DNA from: Utricularia gibba
Taxonomy: Eukaryota; Plantae; Magnoliophyta
Length of the DNA: 64,000 nt
Assembly (NCBI GenBank): GCA_002189035.1
Contig: NEEC01000021.1
Coordinates: forward strand, 930,001-994,000
Direction: 5' to 3'
Under the pieces are notes generated by a model. That model saw nothing but the letters and a program-made list of their open reading frames with translations, was not told the DNA's origin and did no database searches. Every line of letters begins with the position of its first letter. Within the stretch, counting starts at the first letter, position 1. Shown here piece by piece: positions 1 through 25,413 of the stretch. The position numbers and the translations under genes were made by a program.

Positions 1-300
1 GTTATTATTTCGTAGAACTGTCTAGGAAGCTGCGTGATCATTTTGTTTAGTGTTGATTAAGTTATTATTAGTTGGGGTTTGTCTTAGATTAGGTACACAG
101 TTTTAACTCCGCCAGTGCAACCTTGCACTGCCAGTCCCAAGCCTGGACGAAGGAGGAGGGAAGACTGGGTTATTAGGAAGTCGAATTTCTTGTCTTGGCG
201 TTTGCATTTGCTTTCATGTTCTGAGACTTTTATTTCTTGGTGTTGATGCTTCCAAGTTTTGTGTCCATGCTTGTTCTCTGGATGAGAATCTTGCAACTCT
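1..300 (+). mobile_element. Copy 1 of an ORF-less repeat carrying a twister ribozyme (left end runs off the window)
   Basis: Colinear similarity to about 24420-24810: upstream aagttat..agtt..tag..taggt, the ribozyme core, downstream attag..ag.cgaatt.cttgt, then tgttgatgctt.caag..ttgt..catxxxxxttctc.gGATGAGAATCTTGC (14 identical nt at 281-294 and 24794-24807). No TSD, LTR end or RT ORF found, so the class is uncertain. Confidence 0.6.
98..167 (+). ncRNA. Twister ribozyme, type P1 (copy 1); predicted cleavage between U104 and A105
   Basis: All elements present in order: P1 CAGUUU(98-103)/AAGACUG(161-167); L1 UAA; P2 CUCC(107-110)/GGAG(152-155); T2 GC(111-112)/GC(141-142); P3 CAGUGCA/UGCACUG(113-130); P4 CCAG(131-134)/CUGG(143-146); L4 UCCCAAGC; catalytic-position G156, then A157; T1 CCC/GGG(158-160). 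Matches the rice twister-P1 architecture as I recall it (..UAACACUGCC..GCCGGUCCCAAGCCCGGAUAAAAGUGGAGGG..). Confidence 0.9.
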
Positions 301-730
301 ACTGCTTATCATCCATTGATGGTTACCCATATCGGTAAACTTGGTTGTCTTCATTCCCTAAGCACCCATGTGTCTGTACCATTGACCCCTACCAACAAAC
401 AGGAATCACAGTCTCGGCTGGCCACGGCGGTGAGGAACTGTCAGTGCGTCCCAGCGCCGGCAGCCGAAGTTGCTGCTAGTGCAGGAAGCGCGTCAGGTGG
501 TGGGAGGAATAGCGCCTGCGGCTGAGCATAAAAGCTGAAACGTGTTGTGCCTTCTGCATGTTTTTATTACATAAAGCAATTTATTCAATTTGAGTTTAAT
601 TAGGCTATCCAACCTCATTTGGGCTTGCAGTGACGCTTGCATCTGTGATTTTAATAGGAGTTTAGGCTATGCATTTGCTTTCATATTCTCTCTTGTTTGT
701 TATGAGGTTGGGTCGTGCCTCCATACTTGC

Positions 731-982
731 CTGAGCTTCTATCTGGGGTGCCGCTCCAAACATTTCGCGAGCCGGATCACGTGTTAGGCTGGGCCGTGCC
801 CCTAGTGGGCAGGGCTTCTCTCTGGGTGGGGTCGCACCAAACATTGGGCTTGTCCGCATGAAATGTGAGCTGGGCCCTACACCTTACTGGTCTGAGCTTC
901 TATCTGGGTGGGGCCGCATCAAATGTGAGCCGGGCCGTACCCCTATAGTGGGCTGGGTTTCTATCTGGGTGGGGCCGCATTA
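731..982. repeat. Four degenerate GC-rich tandem units with core (g/t)ttctatctgggtggggccgcat
   Basis: Copies begin near 731, 811, 892 and 951. A second sub-motif aaatgtgagcYgggcc occurs at 861 and 921. Confidence 0.8.
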
Positions 983-1000
983 TGCCTAACATTATAATTA

Positions 1001-1310
1001 TGTTCTAGAAAATTTTTAGAACTTATTTTTATTTTTGAAAAAAGTAAAAAGTAAAAATAATTTATAAAAAATAAAAGTAAAAATGGATGTTCTAGAAAAG
1101 TATAAAATTTTTTATGGATTTATGTTGAAAAATAACAATAGAATACGAAAGTAGCTTATTTCTATTTTTTGAAAAACTATTTTTAAAGTGTAATACCAAA
1201 AATATTATTAGTAAAAGTAGAAATAAAAATAAGTGGTATTCTGGATTAAAATTATTTTTACTTTTTTAAAAATAAAAATAGGTTGTAAAAATTTTCTAGA
1301 ACACACCTTA
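1001..1310. mobile_element. AT-rich fold-back MITE (PIF/Harbinger, Tourist-like), left end eroded
   Basis: Left tgttctagaaaatttttagaacttatttttattttt.aaaaaagtaaaaa is the reverse complement of the right end (..ggttgtaaaaattttctagaacacacc), which is followed by tta. No ORF. Confidence 0.65.
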
Positions 1311-1634: not shown

Positions 1635-4226
1635 ATGTCTAATGCCACCGTCGTTCCGTTCGATCGGGCGCACCAGACGATCATCTGCTACGCTCCCAAG
1701 TACATATCTACCAGAGGCGTATGGCAGGGGGACAACCCTTTGGATTTCGCGTTGCCCACCATTCTTCTGCAACTCATTCTCATTATTTTCATCACCCGCA
1801 TCCTCGTCTACCTGATGAAGCCCCTCCGGCAGCCCCGCGTCGTTCCCGAGATTCTGGTAAGAGAAATTATGATGATGAGCGATTGGAATGGGATGCCTGA
1901 ATGCTGTCCTGAGTTTGGTTGTGTGATGGGTGACAGGGAGGAATCATCTTGGGGCCGTCGGTGCTGGGGAGGAGCATCGTCTTCGCAGATGCGGTGTTTC
2001 CGTTAAGGAGTGTGATGATCATGAACACGATGGCGAATGTGGCTCTTCTGTACCAGCTTTTCCTGTTAGCTTTAGAAATGGATATCATGGTGGTGAAACG
2101 CATCGAACGGAAGGCGGTGGTCATCGCCATCGCCGGCATGGTGCTTCCATTTCTCATCGGCATCTCCTTCGCTCTCTTGATCCATACCAGAGTCCGGTAC
2201 CTGAAGCTTAGCACTTTCCTCCTCTTCGTCGGCGTGGTCCTCTCCGTCACAGCCTTCCGGTGCTCACCCGCCTCTTAGCGGAGCTCAAGCTCCTCAACAC
2301 CGAGATCGGGAGAGTGTCCCTGTCGACCGCCCTTGTCAGTGATTTCTTCGCGTGGGCGCTGCTGGCGTTCGCCATCGCCATAGCAGAGAACGATGAGCAG
2401 TCATCGATCTCCTTCTGGGTCATCCTCACCGCCGTCCTCTTCGTACTCTTCCACATCTGCGCCGTCCGCCCCCTTGTCATGTGGGTCATCAGAACAACCC
2501 CAGAAGGCGAATCCGTCAGCGAGCTCTGCCTCTGCCTCATCATGTGCGCCGTGATGATCTCCGGCTTCCTCGCCGACGCCATCGGCATGAACTCCTGCTT
2601 CGGCGCCTTCATGATGGGGCTCGTCATCCCCAACGGCCCTCTGAACGTGACCCTCATTGAGCGGCTCGAGGACTTCACTTCCACAGTCATGATGCCCCTC
2701 TTCTTCGCCATGATCGGACTCAAAGTCGACATCTTCTCTGTGTACGAGGCGTGGATATGGATCAGCTTGGGCTTCGTCATCATCCTCGCCAGTGTTGGGA
2801 AGATTGCAGGAACTCTGCTTCTTTCTCTGCACTACAAGATTCCCTTCTACGACGGCTTGACTCTTGGCATGCTGATGAACACAAAAGGGCTTGTTGAAAT
2901 GATCGTCCTCAACGTGGGGAGAGATCAGAAGGTGCGGAATTTCAGACTGATTACATGTTACAGAACGAAGCATAAGATCGTGTGTCTCCATTTTTGCAGG
3001 TTTTGGATGTTAAAGCTTTCTCTGTGATGGTGATTGCGGTGGTGGTGATGACGACTCTGATCACTCCTTTAGTCGGCGTGATGTACAAGCCCAGCAAGAG
3101 ATATGCCCACTACAAGAGGAGGACGATGCAGAGAGCGAAGCAGGAAGGGGAGTTCCGAGTTCTGGTTTGCGTCCACATGGCGAGAAACGTGCCCACCATC
3201 ATCAACCTCCTGGAAGCTCTGCATCCCAACAAGAAGTCTCCCATCTTCGTCTCCCTTCTCCATCTAGTGGAGCTCGCCGGACGGACATCGGCGATGATGG
3301 TCGGCGACAACCACGTCACCGGCGCGAACCACATGCACAGCCAATCGAACCACATCGTCAACGCCTTCGAAAACTTCCGGCACCACGTGAGCCACATCTC
3401 CATCAACTCCCTCACCGCTGTCTCTCCCTACTCCACCATCCACGAAGACGTGTGCAATGTGGCGGAGGATCAGCACTCCGCCTTCATCATCATCCCGTTT
3501 CATAAGCATCAGACTGTCGACGGCGGGATGGAGACCAGCAACCCGGCTTTCAGAGCAATCAACCAGAATGTACTGGCCACCGCCCCTTGCTCTGTCGGGA
3601 TCCTCGTCGACCGGGGACTCTCCGGGTCGATGAGATTGACCGGCTCCCAGTTGTCGCAAAGCGTGGCTGTCCTCTTCTTCGGCGGGCCGGACGACCGAGA
3701 GGCATTAGCCTGTGGGTGGCGGATATCTGAGCATCCCAACATCAACCTCACCGTGATTCGATTCCTGTGCGGCGTCCCTCAACGGAGCTTCTCCCGTACA
3801 GAAAGTGAGATTCTGACGATCTCCACGAGCGAAATCGACAGGGAAAGAGAGCTGGACGAGAACTACATCAGCGAATTCAGAGCAAGAACAATGTCGGATC
3901 CATCGATTTTTTTCACCGAAAGAGTAGTGAGCCATGGGGAAGAAACGGTTGCAGCTATACGATCAATAGATTCAACCCATGATTTGTTCATCGTGGGTCG
4001 CGGCCAGGGAATAGAAACCCCGGTGACGGCGGGGTTGACGGACTGGAGCGAGTGCCCGGAGCTGGGGCCGATCGGAGATTTGTTGGCAGCGTCGGATATT
4101 TCAGCAAGATACTCCGTTCTTGTGGTGCAGCAGTATCTGGGAATAGAGGCCTATGGAGATTGGACAGCGGTGCAACCCGGAAGCCCGAATCAATATGAAA
4201 TGGGCCCGGTCCGACCGGCAGTGTAA
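1635..4226 (+). CDS. CHX: Cation/H+ antiporter (CPA2, CHX15-like); 3 exons (1635-1856, 1937-2931, 3000-4226); apparent -1 frameshift at 2257-2258
   Basis: Motifs GVWQGDNPLDFALP, GLTLGMLMNTKGLVEMIVLNVG, APCSVGILVDRG, ECPELGPIGDLL; GT-AG introns. The frame switches from SVTAF to VLTRLLAELKLL with no intron between. Confidence 0.93.
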
Positions 4227-4698: not shown

Positions 4699-5706
4699 TC
4701 ACACCGTTTCGATTTTGCCGCGCTGCTGCGCCCGCCGGGAATTACGCTGCCTCCGTTGCCGGTAAGCAAAAGCACCGGCGCCGACCAGACACGCCACTCC
4801 GATGACTGCGAAGACCAACTCAGCCTCACCGCCTTCGATTTCACGGGACCTGTCCTCCTCACGCTGCTGCTGTATGAGCAACTCTTCTTTCTTCCGGACC
4901 GGAGCTTTTTGTACCTTTTCAGTATGATTGGAGTTCGCCTGTTTCTCTTCACGGTAGCGGGAAGAGGGAGGAGTCGGAGCTGGTTCATCGCTTTCAGGTT
5001 TGTCGTCATCGGGCTTCTGCTGTATGATTATGTCTTCTTCCTTGTCTTTCGGCTGGGTCTCTTCTTCGCTTCTTCTGTCTCCTGGCTTATCGTTATCATC
5101 GAGGTCGGACGCTTCATCGTGGGGAGATGTAGTTTTAGTGTCTTTTGAGGTTTCAGTCTGCGGTGGAGAGGTTGTCGTTGAATTTTTCTCCCCAGAAGCC
5201 ACTGTGTCCGTTGGCGGAGATGGGACTGGAGGTGAAGGCGGAGATGTGGCCTCCGATCCGTTGGTGGGTCCCGACTGCTTCCCTGGCGGCGAAGGCGGAG
5301 ACGTAGCCTGCGTTTCGTTGGCTGGTTGAACCAACGGTTCGGGCTGCTTCGCCTCAGGCGAATTCGGAGACGCGACCTCCGATTCGTTTGCGGGTCCCGA
5401 CTGCACCGCCGAAGGCGAAGGCGGAGACGTACCCTGCGTTTCGTTGCTGGGTAGACGCAACGCAACGGGCTGCGTCGCCTGAGGCGAAGGCAGAGGCCCG
5501 GCCTCCGATTCGTTCGTGGGTCCCGACTGCGCCGCCGGAGGCGAAGACAGAGACGCAGCCTGCGTTTCGTTGGTGGGTTGACGCAACCCAGCCGGCTGCG
5601 ATGCAGTAGCGGAAGGCGGGGAATCTTCAGACAAAATTGTGATGGGAAACATCAGGAATGCGGCGGCGATGCAACCATACACAAGATTACGATGAATCCA
5701 ATTCAT
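4699..5706 (-). CDS. Single-exon Pro/Ser/Thr-rich type-I membrane glycoprotein with 3 x 42-aa ectodomain repeats (an upstream in-frame ATG exists at 5871)
   Basis: Hydrophobic N-terminus after MNWIHR; repeats with 126-bp period (cgtttcgt at 5311, 5437, 5563); many N-x-S/T sequons; TM segment LVFAVIGVACLVGAGAFAY followed by a basic tail. Confidence 0.75.
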   Translation of the reverse strand: MNWIHRNLVYGCIAAAFLMFPITILSEDSPPSATASQPAGLRQPTNETQAASLSSPPAAQSGPTNESEAGPLPSPQATQPVALRLPSNETQGTSPPSPSAVQSGPANESEVASPNSPEAKQPEPLVQPANETQATSPPSPPGKQSGPTNGSEATSPPSPPVPSPPTDTVASGEKNSTTTSPPQTETSKDTKTTSPHDEASDLDDNDKPGDRRSEEETQPKDKEEDIIIQQKPDDDKPESDEPAPTPPSSRYREEKQANSNHTEKVQKAPVRKKEELLIQQQREEDRSREIEGGEAELVFAVIGVACLVGAGAFAYRQRRQRNSRRAQQRGKIETV

Positions 5707-6428
5707 CTTTACGATGATCGAGACCGTACGGGCGGAGGAATGTGAGAAATAGTGAGAATTAGGGAACTGATAATGGGGGTGATAGATATTGGGAGAATAC
5801 TTTGACTTTGGAAATGAAGTCGGGGGCAGCGGCGGCGGCGACAACGGCGACGGCGGCAAATTCATATTCATTTATTAAACCTAAACAATCTGCTCACATG
5901 GGGAAGGTTTTATTGAAAATTAAAGCCCTAATTTTGTAGTTGGATAGGGGTGTTCTCTGTTTTAATGGAATCGATTTTAAAATTTTATGATTAAAATTAT
6001 TTTATATATTATAAAATTATTTATTCTAATAGATTAAAATTAGATTATAGAATTTGATACATTAAATTATATATTGTAAAAATTTAGTATAAATATAAAA
6101 TGTAATTTTTGGGATGTATAACAATAAATAAGTATATTTTTTATGTAATTTCAAAATAATATCTTAATAAATTCGATAATTTGAATTTATAATTTATATA
6201 TATAATGGATGAATATTAGAATCTACAAAATTAAAGAAAAATTCATTTTAATAAAGTATAATTACAGAACTGGCCCGACGATTATATGCATTGATTAAAG
6301 GGAAAATTTACGGGTAAAATGTTTATGGGCTTGTGATTCCGGCCCATTGGCCCAATTTCTGCTGTGAAAAATTAGCAACTGTCTGTCATTCTGTGGCTGA
6401 ACCTGGAGGAGGGATTGTTGGAGGGAAA

Positions 6429-23335: not shown

Positions 23336-23610
23336 GGCAGCGACGGAGGAACAGCGGAGAAGACACTTCCGTTCTTCCAAAGGTGATGGGTTAGTTCAGA
23401 ATGGGCATCATCAAAATCCCATTGAAGAACAGTAAGCTCCTGGACACTTTGCTTTAGTAGCAGTAAGCCGTTAGGCTCTTATTGGGCCGAACTACTAAGT
23501 GGGCTTTCATGGACTCTTCATTTTTTGTAATAGTAAATAGCTCATTGGGCCTTATTGCTTAATGGGCTTCTGAACAAATTCAGGATTCCTCCTCCCCGCG
23601 TACTTCTAGG

Positions 23611-24810
23611 TATATAAACACCCCAGTTCTTCTTTGTTTTGCAGTGTGTAGAATGGAGTGTGGGGTTTTTTAGTTCATAGATAGGGAATAGGGATTTCCG
23701 AGGAGAGATTTAGGGTCAGGTACGTCTGCCGCTTTCTCATCTTTCCTATTTCGGTTGTTTTTTTTTTTAATCAGGATTGCTTGTTGGTCTTCCTTCGTTT
23801 TGATACCTCAATTTTATGTGCGGTTGTCTTTATTTTTTAGCAATCTGAAGTTGTTGGAGATTTTGCGTTTGGTTTATGTTTTTGATTCTGTGTTCTCAAC
23901 TGTTTGTTAGTAATGTATGAACAATATCTTTAATTGCCTTGGAATTTCGTGTTTTTTTATAATTCTTCCAATATGGAACGAGCTGAACCGTTGTTTCGTG
24001 TTTCTGTTGATAGTCTTGTTGAACTGTGCTCGGTCTGAGTGTTGATCTTGGTTTCTTATGCAGGAATGGCGCTGGTCGTTGCGATTGCCAGTTTCCTCCA
24101 TTCATCCAAAAAAGAAAGAAAAAAAGGCGAAAAAAAAAGAAAAAGAAAAAAGAGGCCTAGAAAAAAGAACATTGCCAGCCTTCCCCGCGATCAAATCAGT
24201 CATTCCATCCCACTGGAATCGCTATAGCGGTTTATTACCACCTTTTTCCATGTGAATCTGCAAGGCTTGGCATTCATCCTCTATCATCTTCTGTCGCAAC
24301 TCAGGTGGCCTTCTCTGATTTTAGCCAATGTATGATAAGGGGTTAGTTGGTATTTTAGGGCTATTTATGGGCTAATTTATCAGCCTGTAGATGCTTGTTA
24401 ATGTTGGAGAAGTTATTCGTTTAGGGCTATGCATACCCTCAAGCTATCTGTTTGAATCTATTTATTCAAGGGGTATTCAAGTTATCAGTTTAGGTCTATG
24501 TAGAGTAGGTGCAAGGTTTTCAACTCCGCCTGTGCAATGTTGCGCAGCCAGTCCCAAGCCTGGTCGAAGGAGGAGGGGAGACTTGATAATTAGTGAGCCG
24601 AATTGCTTGTGCCTTGTTGTATAACTTTGGTATTTGTAGTGAAGATGCGTCTTTTTTAATTTTGATTGATCCTTGAGTGTCCTTCCTCTAGGATCGAACT
24701 GTGCATATAGTTTGTCACAATGTGTGATTGAAGTTCCAGCATTTAGTTTGTGCTGTTGATGCTTTCAAGTGTTGTCTTCATCTTTCTTCTCAGGATGAGA
24801 ATCTTGCGTC
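23611..24810 (+). mobile_element. Copy 2 of the twister-bearing ORF-less repeat, within a putative spliced non-coding Pol II transcript (boundaries uncertain)
   Basis: TATATAAA at 23611; donor CAG|GTACGT (23720); acceptor ttatgcag (24063); A-rich tract at about 24106-24170; weak donor at 24305; acceptor ttcttctcag (24793). Homology to 1-300 spans about 24420-24810. Confidence 0.5.
24514..24584 (+). ncRNA. Twister ribozyme, type P1 (copy 2); predicted cleavage between C24521 and A24522
   Basis: P1 AGGUUUU/GAGACUU; L1 CAA; P2 CUCC/GGAG; T2 GC/GC; P3 CUGUGCA/UGCGCAG; P4 CCAG/CUGG; L4 UCCCAAGC; G24573, A24574; T1 GGG(24575-24577). 50 of 57 core nt are identical to copy 1. Confidence 0.88.
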
Positions 24811-25413
24811 AAGTCTTATACTCCACAAGAGGTATCGGCAAGACAAAGAGATAAGCAGTGGGAGACAGCAAAGCAAGATTTACGGCACGGTGCTGTTACA
24901 GGCTATTAAAAATGGTAAACGTACACAGACAGAACCATGCAGTTGTGGTTACAGAAGCAGCAAGCTCTGTAAACAACCATACTGCATTCGCATATTGGCA
25001 ATGTCAACACATTGTGCTTGTGTCGCTTTATCCTGACGGCAAAAAAGATGTGGTTTGGTGCGAAGTTTGAAGAATTGAGATCGAGGTGGGATTGCCCATA
25101 GGCAATTGAAAGTGAGGCTGATTTTTCGCACTTTCGGGAACTCTTCTTGGCTTCAAAACAAATTGGATCCCCAATCTACATGTGTCAGGCCGTAAGGGGC
25201 CGTAAATTGTGTTGGATTTAATTTCAATGGTGACAACAGCATGCGTATAAAAGCGCTCAACTCCGCTGTTTCGGAAGCTTCTCGTGTCACTCCGTTCTTC
25301 TCGGCTGCTGGTTTACTTCTCTCTTTTGAGGGGTGCTGCTGGTTCTGCTTCTAACATATCAGGGACTAGAATTCTTTCTAAGTGGGCTTCCGCCGGTTTG
25401 ATCCTCTACGCCC

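What the first reader, a model, noticed from the sequence alone, without database searches (positions are those of the whole stretch)
98..167. Complete twister-P1 self-cleaving ribozyme (copy 1)
Seen: every helix and pseudoknot of a type-P1 twister can be drawn (P1 with one unpaired nt, P2, P3, P4, T1, T2), with L1 UAA, L4 UCCCAAGC and the G-A-GGG catalytic segment. Established: twister ribozymes occur in plants (the rice Osa ribozyme was crystallised) and have been linked to the 5' ends of RTE-type non-LTR retrotransposons. Inference: this copy should be active and cut between U104 and A105, leaving a 2',3'-cyclic phosphate and a 5'-OH. No RTE endonuclease/RT ORF follows it.
Basis: partly seen in the sequence, partly recalled or inferred. 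Interest (0 to 1): 0.9.

Follow-up and report, generated by a model that had tools for sequence, protein, structure and literature searches.

The report
Genuine twister self-cutting RNA in a plant
Window 98-167 holds a complete, well-conserved copy of the known twister self-cleaving ribozyme in a flowering-plant genome, apparently sitting in intron-like sequence of a small duplicated gene rather than in a jumping element; this makes it a new example of a known RNA whose job in plants is still unknown.

Summary
Rfam's type-P1 twister model (RF03160) matches window 100-164 (+) end to end at 64.5 bits (E 2.5e-12 for the whole window). That is 2.7 bits below Rfam's strict cut-off, which only 3 of 20 environmental twisters reached. 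P1 (with A164 bulged), P2, P3, P4 and both pseudoknots pair. The conserved core and the U104|A105 cut site are in place.

A second copy lies at 24517-24581. It differs at 9 of 65 positions, and none breaks a pair or a core base (4 of 200,000 random trials do as well), so the fold has been under selection.

Homology between the copies starts about 40 nt before the cut and ends without a tail, which argues against a retroelement 5' end. Both copies lie in T-rich, intron-like sequence that ends at a conserved pyrimidine tract and AG. Cleavage is also untested.

This scan had already reported the sister copies in this genome (s1-186715, s1-261633).

Verdict: a new member of a known ribozyme class, in a genomic setting worth testing.

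The parts
98..167 (+). Complete type-P1 twister ribozyme, copy 1 (P1-P4, T1, T2)
   Evidence: Rfam RF03160, 64.5 bits, E 2.5e-12, full model 1-68 at 100-164. All pairs verified. The MFE fold recovers the helices.
104..105 (+). Predicted scissile bond U104|A105. The products would be an upstream RNA ending in a 2',3'-cyclic phosphate and a downstream RNA starting with a 5'-OH at A105.
   Evidence: Alignment to consensus U5|A6. The rice Osa-1-4 bond is U6|A7 (PMC6154101). Inferred, not measured.
156..160 (+). GAGGG segment: G156 is the predicted general-base guanine at the foot of P2, and G158-160 form pseudoknot T1 with C136-138.
   Evidence: Role of the conserved guanine (G45 in rice, G48 in env22) from PMC6154101.
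134..143 (+). Terminal loop L4, GUCCCAAGCC. It supplies CCC to T1 and GC (141-142) to T2 with G111 C112.
   Evidence: Identical in both copies and to the Rfam consensus.
65..97 (+). Upstream flank homologous to copy 2 (T-rich). It contains TAG|GTACAC at 92|93, a donor-like motif of uncertain meaning.
   Evidence: blastn 65-193 vs 24482-24610, 80%. 27 of 40 identical in the 40 nt before the ribozyme. Composition.
168..285 (+). T-rich (T 0.47) intron-like sequence after the ribozyme. It ends in a conserved block (229-294) with a branch-point-like TTGAT, a pyrimidine tract and AG 284-285.
   Evidence: Homology 65-271 vs 24482-24687 (72%) and 229-315 vs 24742-24825 (77%). T content drops from 0.47 to 0.24 at 285/286, and likewise at 24793/24794 in copy 2. 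The splice acceptor is inferred.
286..580 (+). Putative downstream exon(s) of the host transcript, with CATAAA motifs at 527 and 570. Only 286-315 is alignable with copy 2.
Evidence: Low confidence.
24514..24584 (+). Sister twister, copy 2, used here as the comparator
   Evidence: RF03160, 57.5 bits, E 2.6e-10. All pairs are kept and P1 is 7 bp without a bulge. 9 differences, all structure-neutral.

Best explanation
Window 98-167 (+) is a genuine, probably catalytically competent type-P1 twister ribozyme. It is one of a small paralogous family in this flowering-plant genome, with a second copy 24.4 kb downstream on the same strand.

Once transcribed, it should fold into the double-pseudoknot twister fold and cut its own backbone between U104 and A105, by the class's guanine/adenine acid-base mechanism (G156 and A105). 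The upstream RNA would end in a 2',3'-cyclic phosphate and the downstream RNA would begin with a 5'-OH.

It is not the head of a retrotransposon. It most likely sits inside a U-rich intron, or at least the untranslated 3' part, of a short spliced RNA-polymerase-II gene whose upstream exons lie before the window start. Cleavage would then cut the precursor between the upstream exon(s) and the last exon(s), in kinetic competition with splicing. This would set how much full-length spliced RNA is made and how much truncated, cyclic-phosphate-ended RNA plus 5'-OH fragment.

Shown: the motif, its statistical significance, every helix and pseudoknot, structure-preserving divergence from copy 2, and the absence of RT/EN ORFs. 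Inferred: catalytic activity, intron location and the consequence for the host transcript.
For: Motif and significance:
- RF03160 matches the full model at 64.5 bits, E 2.5e-12.
- The score lies inside the range of natural twisters, 43.9-68.1 bits, of which only 3 of 20 pass the gathering score.
- Every P1-P4, T1 and T2 pair forms in both copies.

Selection on the fold:
- The copies differ at 9 of 65 positions. These are one compensatory pair (A114-U129 to U-A), two changes to G-U wobble pairs (A127G, A161G), two P3-loop changes, one variable L2 position, the N-1 base (U to C) and the outermost P1 base.
- None touches the core. Only 4 of 200,000 random sets of 9 substitutions do as well.
- C at N-1 is a natural variant, seen in about 21 of 119 metagenome twisters.
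- Flanks are about 68-72% identical and soon become unalignable.

Context:
- Both ribozymes are G+C-rich islands in T-rich sequence (T 0.39-0.47), like the predicted intron 1 of the copy-2 gene (T 0.49).
- In both copies T drops to 0.24 exactly at a conserved pyrimidine tract plus AG.
- The copy-2 locus has a TATA box at 23611, four TGGGCY motifs upstream, and good donor and acceptor motifs.
- No RT/EN domain or long ORF follows.

Leads from earlier notes, not verified here: s1-261633 and s1-186715 report sister copies in an intron of a spliced lncRNA pair, and a transcript starting at the predicted cut.
Against: - No RNA evidence was obtained. Transcription, splicing and cleavage at this locus are therefore unshown.
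- The score is 2.7 bits under Rfam's gathering threshold.
- The L2 3' strand reads ACGAA instead of the consensus gUAAA. G at the third position occurs in only 8 of 119 natural core-pattern matches, and the 'CG' pair in 2 of 119. The effect on rate is unknown.
- P1 needs a bulged A164. A slipped, bulge-free register that pairs the N-1 base U104 is thermodynamically preferred and could slow cleavage.
- The upstream exons of the presumed host gene lie outside the window.
- Only two sequences support the selection argument.
- No twister lies within 10 kb of CHX15-like homologues in three Lamiales genomes, so there is no evidence of deep conservation, although orthology is uncertain.
Confidence: 0.72

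Rival explanations
1. The twister marks the 5' end of a non-autonomous non-LTR (RTE-mobilised, SINE-like) retroelement. The ribozyme would trim read-through transcripts to give the element's RNA 5' end, as in Schistosoma Perere-3.
For: Twister variants sit at the 5' end of Perere-3/RTE elements (PMC8501958, PMC7761336). The two copies share only about 250 nt and no protein-coding potential. Type-P1 twisters were reported enriched near class I elements in plants (PMC11933835).
Against: Homology between the copies starts about 40 nt upstream of the cut site rather than at it. It ends at about 315/24825 without an A-rich or microsatellite tail or target-site duplication. Copy number is very low: 2 in 64 kb, and about six in the genome according to the unverified note s1-186715. 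Both copies carry the full P1 5' strand in conserved sequence. No RT/EN ORF is present.
Confidence: 0.07
2. It is part of a retrozyme-like element, the twister analogue of plant hammerhead retrozymes. Two ribozymes in direct repeats would excise a 600-1000 nt RNA that circularises.
For: Plants carry hammerhead retrozymes that work this way (PMC4918200). There are two same-strand twisters in the window.
Against: The two twisters are 24.4 kb apart and separated by ordinary genes (CHX antiporter, MutS homologue and others). There is no second ribozyme within 1-2 kb of either copy at E<=0.1. No LTR-like direct repeats flank copy 1, and blastn of the copy-2 unit against the window finds only the two short blocks.
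Confidence: 0.03
3. The ribozyme is exonic and acts as a 3'-end-forming or destabilising device of the host RNA. It would lie in the terminal or 3'-untranslated part of the transcript rather than in an intron, like the twisters reported in UTRs of rice genes.
For: Rice twisters are reported in UTRs (PMC10226581). I have no spliced reads. The donor for the presumed intron of copy 1 lies outside the window, or is the weak TAG|GTACAC at 92|93.
Against: The T-rich flanks and the conserved pyrimidine tract plus AG 120-210 nt downstream in both copies look like an intron end. The earlier follow-up on sister copies places the twister in an intron (s1-261633, unverified here).
Confidence: 0.15
4. It is an inactive relic: a twister-shaped sequence that no longer cleaves or is never transcribed.
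For: Sub-threshold Rfam score, the unusual L2 strand ACGAA, a bulged or slipped P1, and no RNA holder among public runs.
Against: All core nucleotides and all pairs are intact in two copies whose flanks have diverged to about 70% or beyond alignment. The pattern of 9 neutral or compensatory differences is very unlikely without selection (4 of 200,000).
Confidence: 0.08

Closest known systems
Type-P1 twister ribozyme (Rfam RF03160), e.g. rice Osa-1-4 (PDB 4OJI)
   Same: Same open-P1 topology, P2 and P4, the optional P3 (reported in 78% of twisters, PMC6154101), both pseudoknots, the UAA / GAGGG internal loop, the GUCCCAAGCC loop and the N|A cut site. It is also from a plant nuclear genome, where twister and hammerhead are the only small ribozymes reported (PMC10226581).
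   Different: Different plant lineage: the best CHX protein matches are about 65% to Lamiales and other asterids. It has a P3 stem, which the crystallised Osa-1-4 form lacks. The L2 3' strand is ACGAA rather than the consensus. P1 is bulged. It scores 2.7 bits below Rfam's gathering score. The context looks intronic rather than the UTRs described for rice.
Twister variants at the 5' end of Perere-3 / RTE non-LTR retrotransposons (Schistosoma mansoni)
   Same: Same ribozyme class in a eukaryotic genome, with cleavage expected to define a 5'-OH RNA end.
   Different: Those are truncated variants whose P1 5' strand comes from the target-site duplication, and they are followed by EN/RT ORFs (PMC8501958). 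Here the ribozyme is complete, is embedded in conserved upstream sequence, has no RT/EN ORF behind it and occurs in few copies.
Intronic self-cleaving ribozymes of animals (CPEB3 HDV-like ribozyme; intronic hammerheads of amniotes)
   Same: A fast self-cleaving RNA conserved inside an intron of a polymerase-II gene, where cleavage competes with splicing. This comparison rests on my own knowledge of that literature and was not checked here.
   Different: Different ribozyme class and kingdom. The host here seems to be a short non-coding or micro-ORF gene. The intron location is inferred, not shown.
Plant hammerhead retrozymes
   Same: ORF-less plant sequences carrying a small self-cleaving ribozyme (PMC4918200).
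   Different: Retrozymes have two ribozymes in LTR-like direct repeats 600-1000 nt apart and yield circular RNA. Here there is one ribozyme per locus and no repeats.

Membership tests
Twister ribozyme, type P1 (Rfam RF03160) | Significant match to the family covariance model over its full length | tested here: met
   64.5 bits, model 1-68/68, E 2.5e-12 in 64 kb.
Twister ribozyme, type P1 (Rfam RF03160) | Score at or above Rfam's curated gathering threshold (67.2 bits) | tested here: not met
   64.5 against 67.2. The threshold is strict: only 3 of 20 environmental twisters with the same core reach it, so this does not argue against membership.
Twister ribozyme, type P1 (Rfam RF03160) | Helices P1, P2 and P4 (plus optional P3), with the chain open at P1 | tested here: met
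   All pairs are Watson-Crick or G-U. P1 is 6 bp with A164 bulged.
Twister ribozyme, type P1 (Rfam RF03160) | Double pseudoknot: L4 pairs with L1 (T1) and with L2 (T2) | tested here: met
   C136-138 with G158-160, and G111 C112 with G141 C142, in both copies. Architecture as described in PMC6154101 and PMC4666379. The exact partner assignment rests on my own knowledge of the structures.
Twister ribozyme, type P1 (Rfam RF03160) | Conserved core nucleotides (A A after the cut, GCC, GUCCCAAGCC, AA before P2', GAGGG) | tested here: met
   All match the upper-case consensus, except that U52 A53 of the model read C148 G149.
Twister ribozyme, type P1 (Rfam RF03160) | Site-specific self-cleavage at N|A of L1, giving 2',3'-cyclic phosphate and 5'-OH ends | not testable with these tools
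   Needs an in vitro cleavage assay or end-specific RNA sequencing.
Twister-headed non-LTR (RTE / Perere-3-like) retroelement | Ribozyme at the element's 5' end, followed by an endonuclease/RT ORF or by a SINE body with a 3' tail and target-site duplications | tested here: not met
   No RT/EN Pfam hit and no ORF above 70 aa. Homology starts about 40 nt before the cut and ends without a tail.
Retrozyme-like circular-RNA element | Two ribozymes in direct repeats flanking 0.6-1 kb | tested here: not met
   One ribozyme per locus; the next copy is 24.4 kb away across protein genes.

The most novel reading that the evidence does not exclude
The twister is a selected, functional part of a small family of spliced polymerase-II non-coding (or micro-ORF) genes. 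Placed in their last intron, it would decide by fast co-transcriptional self-cleavage whether the precursor is spliced to full length, or is released as a truncated RNA with a cyclic-phosphate end plus a stable 5'-OH fragment. That would be the first defined cellular role and host-gene context for a twister ribozyme in plants.
Probability: 0.3. Interest if true: 0.65.

Novelty: new member of a known kind. Interest (0 to 1): 0.4.

Why it matters
Twister ribozymes have been known since 2014 and a rice one has been crystallised. Their biological role in plants, and in most organisms, is still unknown (PMC10226581, PMC6765202). The only worked-out eukaryotic role is 5' processing of RTE-type retrotransposons in a flatworm (PMC8501958).

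This locus offers a clean case outside any retrotransposon. Two old paralogous copies have drifted in their flanks but kept every pair and core base of the fold, and both sit in intron-like sequence of a small gene. If RNA data confirm this, it gives a tractable system for asking what self-cleavage does for a host transcript: mutate G156, then follow splicing and RNA ends.

As a sequence feature it is not new in kind. The same scan has already reported its sister copies.

Tried and rejected
1. RNA evidence. The look-up of sequencing runs listed no run on record as RNA and only 5-6% word shares. I sent no letters of 1246-1281 to any search tool afterwards: ORFs overlapping them were left out of the searches, the repeat finder was limited to 1-1200, and they were masked with N in my local blast.

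2. Relatives of the flanks. A metagenome scan with a core pattern gave 120 loci, but their similarity to the window is confined to the ribozyme core 102-163. A viral-contig scan with the family-specific CGAAGG variant found nothing.

3. Synteny. CHX15-like homologues in Penstemon, Primulina and Rehmannia (65-67% identity, orthology uncertain) have no twister within 10 kb at E<=0.01.

4. Finding sister copies through ORFs that overlap the ribozyme. The minus-strand 70-aa ORF and the copy-2 77-aa ORF gave no homologues, and five exact look-ups were not on record. This genome seems absent from the protein collection.

5. Donor-like AGGT[AG] just upstream of twisters. Both window copies have one 12-13 nt before the cut. 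Among metagenome twisters it occurs in 10 of 114 upstream against 1 of 118 downstream, which is close to chance and drawn from redundant sources, so it is not claimed.

6. Structured upstream exon. The copy-2 putative exon 2 (24063-24303) folds no better than shuffles (z 0.22).

7. The Pfam DBINO hit of the minus-strand ORF 84-296 is below cut-off (26.2 against 31) and lies in a Lys/His-rich stretch, so I rejected it.

8. The Pinc lncRNA hit at 143-284 (13.9 bits, E 6) is noise.

9. The original twister paper (PMC3867598) is not held, so conservation percentages per nucleotide could not be checked.

Full report
**Observation**

Window 98-167 reads CAGUUUUAACUCCGCCAGUGCAACCUUGCACUGCCAGUCCCAAGCCUGGACGAAGGAGGAGGGAAGACUG. 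At Rfam's gathering thresholds the whole window gives nothing. With E-value reporting, the type-P1 twister model RF03160 matches 100-164 (+) over all 68 model positions at 64.5 bits. That is E 1.6e-14 in a 400-nt scan and 2.5e-12 in the full 64 kb on both strands.

The shortfall against the gathering score (67.2) is 2.7 bits. To see what that means, I fetched environmental twisters with a core pattern and scanned 20 of them. Their scores run from 43.9 to 68.1 bits and only 3 reach 67.2. Copy 1 would rank seventh. The threshold is simply strict, and the hit is not marginal.

**Anatomy**

- P1: C98-G167, A99-U166, G100-C165, then A164 unpaired, then U101-G163, U102-A162, U103-A161.
- L1: U104 A105 A106, opposite G156 A157 G158 G159 G160.
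- P2: 107-110 with 152-155.
- P3: 114-119 with 124-129.
- P4: 131-133 with 144-146, plus a possible G134-C143.
- T1: C136-138 with G158-160.
- T2: G111 C112 with G141 C142.

The plain thermodynamic fold of 90-175 recovers P1-P4. It uses a slipped, bulge-free P1 that pairs U104 with A161. The active fold needs U104 free, so this alternative register is a small caveat.

The model alignment puts the scissile bond at U104|A105. This corresponds to U6|A7 of rice Osa-1-4. G156 is the 'conserved guanine at the bottom of P2' (G45 in rice, G48 in env22) that acts in catalysis (PMC6154101).

The only departures from upper-case consensus positions are in the 3' strand of L2, which reads ACGAA rather than gUAAA. 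Among 119 natural matches to the core pattern these three positions vary widely. The third is A in about 91% and G in 8 of 119, and the CG combination occurs in 2 of 119. The variant is therefore natural but rare, and its kinetic effect is unknown.

**Second copy and selection**

The same scan finds a second twister at 24517-24581 (+), at 57.5 bits and E 2.6e-10. All its helices and both pseudoknots pair, and its P1 is 7 bp without a bulge.

The two ribozymes differ at 9 of 65 positions:
- A114/U129 becomes U/A, a compensatory change.
- A127G and A161G both create G-U pairs.
- Two changes fall in the P3 loop.
- One falls at a variable L2 position.
- The base 5' of the cut changes from U to C, a variant seen in about 21 of 119 natural twisters.
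- The outermost P1 base changes.

None touches a core base or breaks a pair. In 200,000 trials of 9 random substitutions in copy 1, only 4 did as well. Outside the ribozyme the copies are about 68-72% identical for 40 nt on each side and soon cannot be aligned. With only two sequences this is not a full covariation test, but it is hard to explain without purifying selection on the fold.

**What it is part of**

The genome is a flowering plant. The window encodes:
- a CHX-type cation/H+ antiporter (ATG at 1635, exons to 4226);
- a MutS homologue;
- plant NMP1;
- a SWIRM protein;
- a core-2/I-branching enzyme.

The best CHX matches are about 65% identical, to Lamiales and other asterids.

Between 165 and 1634 no ORF exceeds 70 aa, and the ORFs of 84-989 have no RT or endonuclease hit.

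Twister variants do head RTE-type elements in Schistosoma (PMC8501958) and, according to a review, in the RTE superfamily generally (PMC7761336). This locus does not have that anatomy, for these reasons:
- Homology between the copies runs 65-271 with 24482-24687, and 229-315 with 24742-24825. It therefore begins about 40 nt before the cut site rather than at it.
- It ends without an A-rich or repeat tail or target-site duplication.
- Only two copies occur in 64 kb.

A retrozyme-like reading also fails. There is one ribozyme per locus, the next is 24.4 kb away across ordinary genes, and no LTR-like repeats flank it.

**Intron-like setting (inferred)**

Both ribozymes are G+C-rich islands (AT 0.42-0.43) in T-rich sequence: T is 0.44 and 0.47 around copy 1, and 0.39 and 0.43 around copy 2. 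The second conserved block contains a branch-point-like TTGAT, a pyrimidine tract and an AG. Exactly there T falls to 0.24 in both copies, at 285/286 and at 24793/24794.

The copy-2 locus lies wholly inside the window and reads like a small polymerase-II gene:
- four TGGGCY motifs at 23483-23563;
- TATATAAA at 23611;
- a first exon ending at CAG|GTACGT (23720|23721);
- a T-rich intron (T 0.49) ending at TATGCAG|G (24062|24063);
- an A-rich exon;
- a donor at CAG|GTGGCC (24303|24304);
- an intron of about 490 nt holding the twister;
- the conserved acceptor.

For copy 1 the corresponding upstream exons would lie before the window start.

Earlier notes of this scan point the same way, but I could not verify them:
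- s1-212955 describes a spliced orphan gene running from about 1.2 kb before the window to 580.
- s1-186885 places copy 2 in a predicted intron.
- The follow-ups s1-261633 and s1-186715 report two further sister copies 64 kb upstream in an intron of a spliced lncRNA pair, about six copies in the genome, and a transcript beginning at the predicted cut.

I treat these as leads. Four copies within about 130 kb would fit local gene duplication better than transposition.

**How it most likely works**

On transcription the 70-nt domain folds and cuts between U104 and A105. The upstream exon(s) are left with a short tail ending in a 2',3'-cyclic phosphate. The rest of the intron and the downstream exon are left with a 5'-OH.

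Twisters are among the fastest small ribozymes (PMC6154101). Cleavage would therefore compete with splicing of the host intron and set the ratio of full-length spliced RNA to truncated products. From my own knowledge of work on ribozymes inserted in polymerase-II introns, slow cleavage is tolerated by co-transcriptional splicing and fast cleavage aborts it. Which regime applies here is open. The alternative, that the ribozyme is exonic and acts as a 3'-end or decay device as suggested for rice UTR twisters (PMC10226581), cannot be excluded without reads.

**Limits**

- No RNA evidence was obtained. No RNA run holds the stretch.
I worked beside those places afterwards and sent none of their letters to a search tool.
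- Searches for relatives of the flanks came back empty: metagenomes, viral contigs, ORF-based protein searches and three homologous CHX loci.
- The plant itself seems absent from the protein collection.

**Verdict**

This is a new member of a known ribozyme class. The sister copies were already noted by this scan in the same genome. The non-retroelement, intron-like, selected context is moderately interesting because the function of plant twisters is unknown.

Noticed in passing
window 23483-24832: The copy-2 host locus reads like a small polymerase-II gene: four TGGGCY (site II-like) motifs, TATATAAA at 23611, CAG|GTACGT donor at 23720|23721, acceptor at 24062|24063, and an A-rich exon 24063-24303. 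That exon carries a 53-aa Lys-rich ORF (ATG at 24066), which is not on record in the protein collection. The twister-bearing T-rich stretch then runs to the AG at 24793.
   Followed up: partly
window 705-980: Three to four tandem units of 61-82 nt, each carrying TGGGCY/CTGGG motifs, lie between the twister locus and the CHX gene. They may be a promoter-proximal repeat or a decayed element.
   Followed up: no
window 1001-1050 and 1255-1303: A 50-nt inverted repeat (94%) encloses about 200 A/T-rich bases and looks like a small MITE.
   Followed up: no
window 203-222 and 670-689: A 20-nt direct repeat (19 of 20 identical, TGCATTTGCTTTCATGTTCT) lies 467 nt apart around the putative last exon of the copy-1 host gene. 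It is absent from copy 2 and unexplained.
   Followed up: no
window 5230-5600: A 126-nt tandem repeat (2.9 copies, 81%) lies inside a 390-aa minus-strand ORF (4699-5871) that has no Pfam match.
   Followed up: no
window 1635-4226: A CHX15-like cation/H+ antiporter gene sits on the same strand 1.5 kb downstream of the twister. Homologues in Penstemon, Primulina and Rehmannia have no twister within 10 kb.
   Followed up: partly
L013 333-394; L063 and L085: Metagenome twisters from a 'plant metagenome' contig and two other contigs share a downstream motif with each other (TTGTG.TAGG..TTG....CCAACGTAAA) but not with the window. This may be another eukaryotic twister-bearing repeat family.
   Followed up: no
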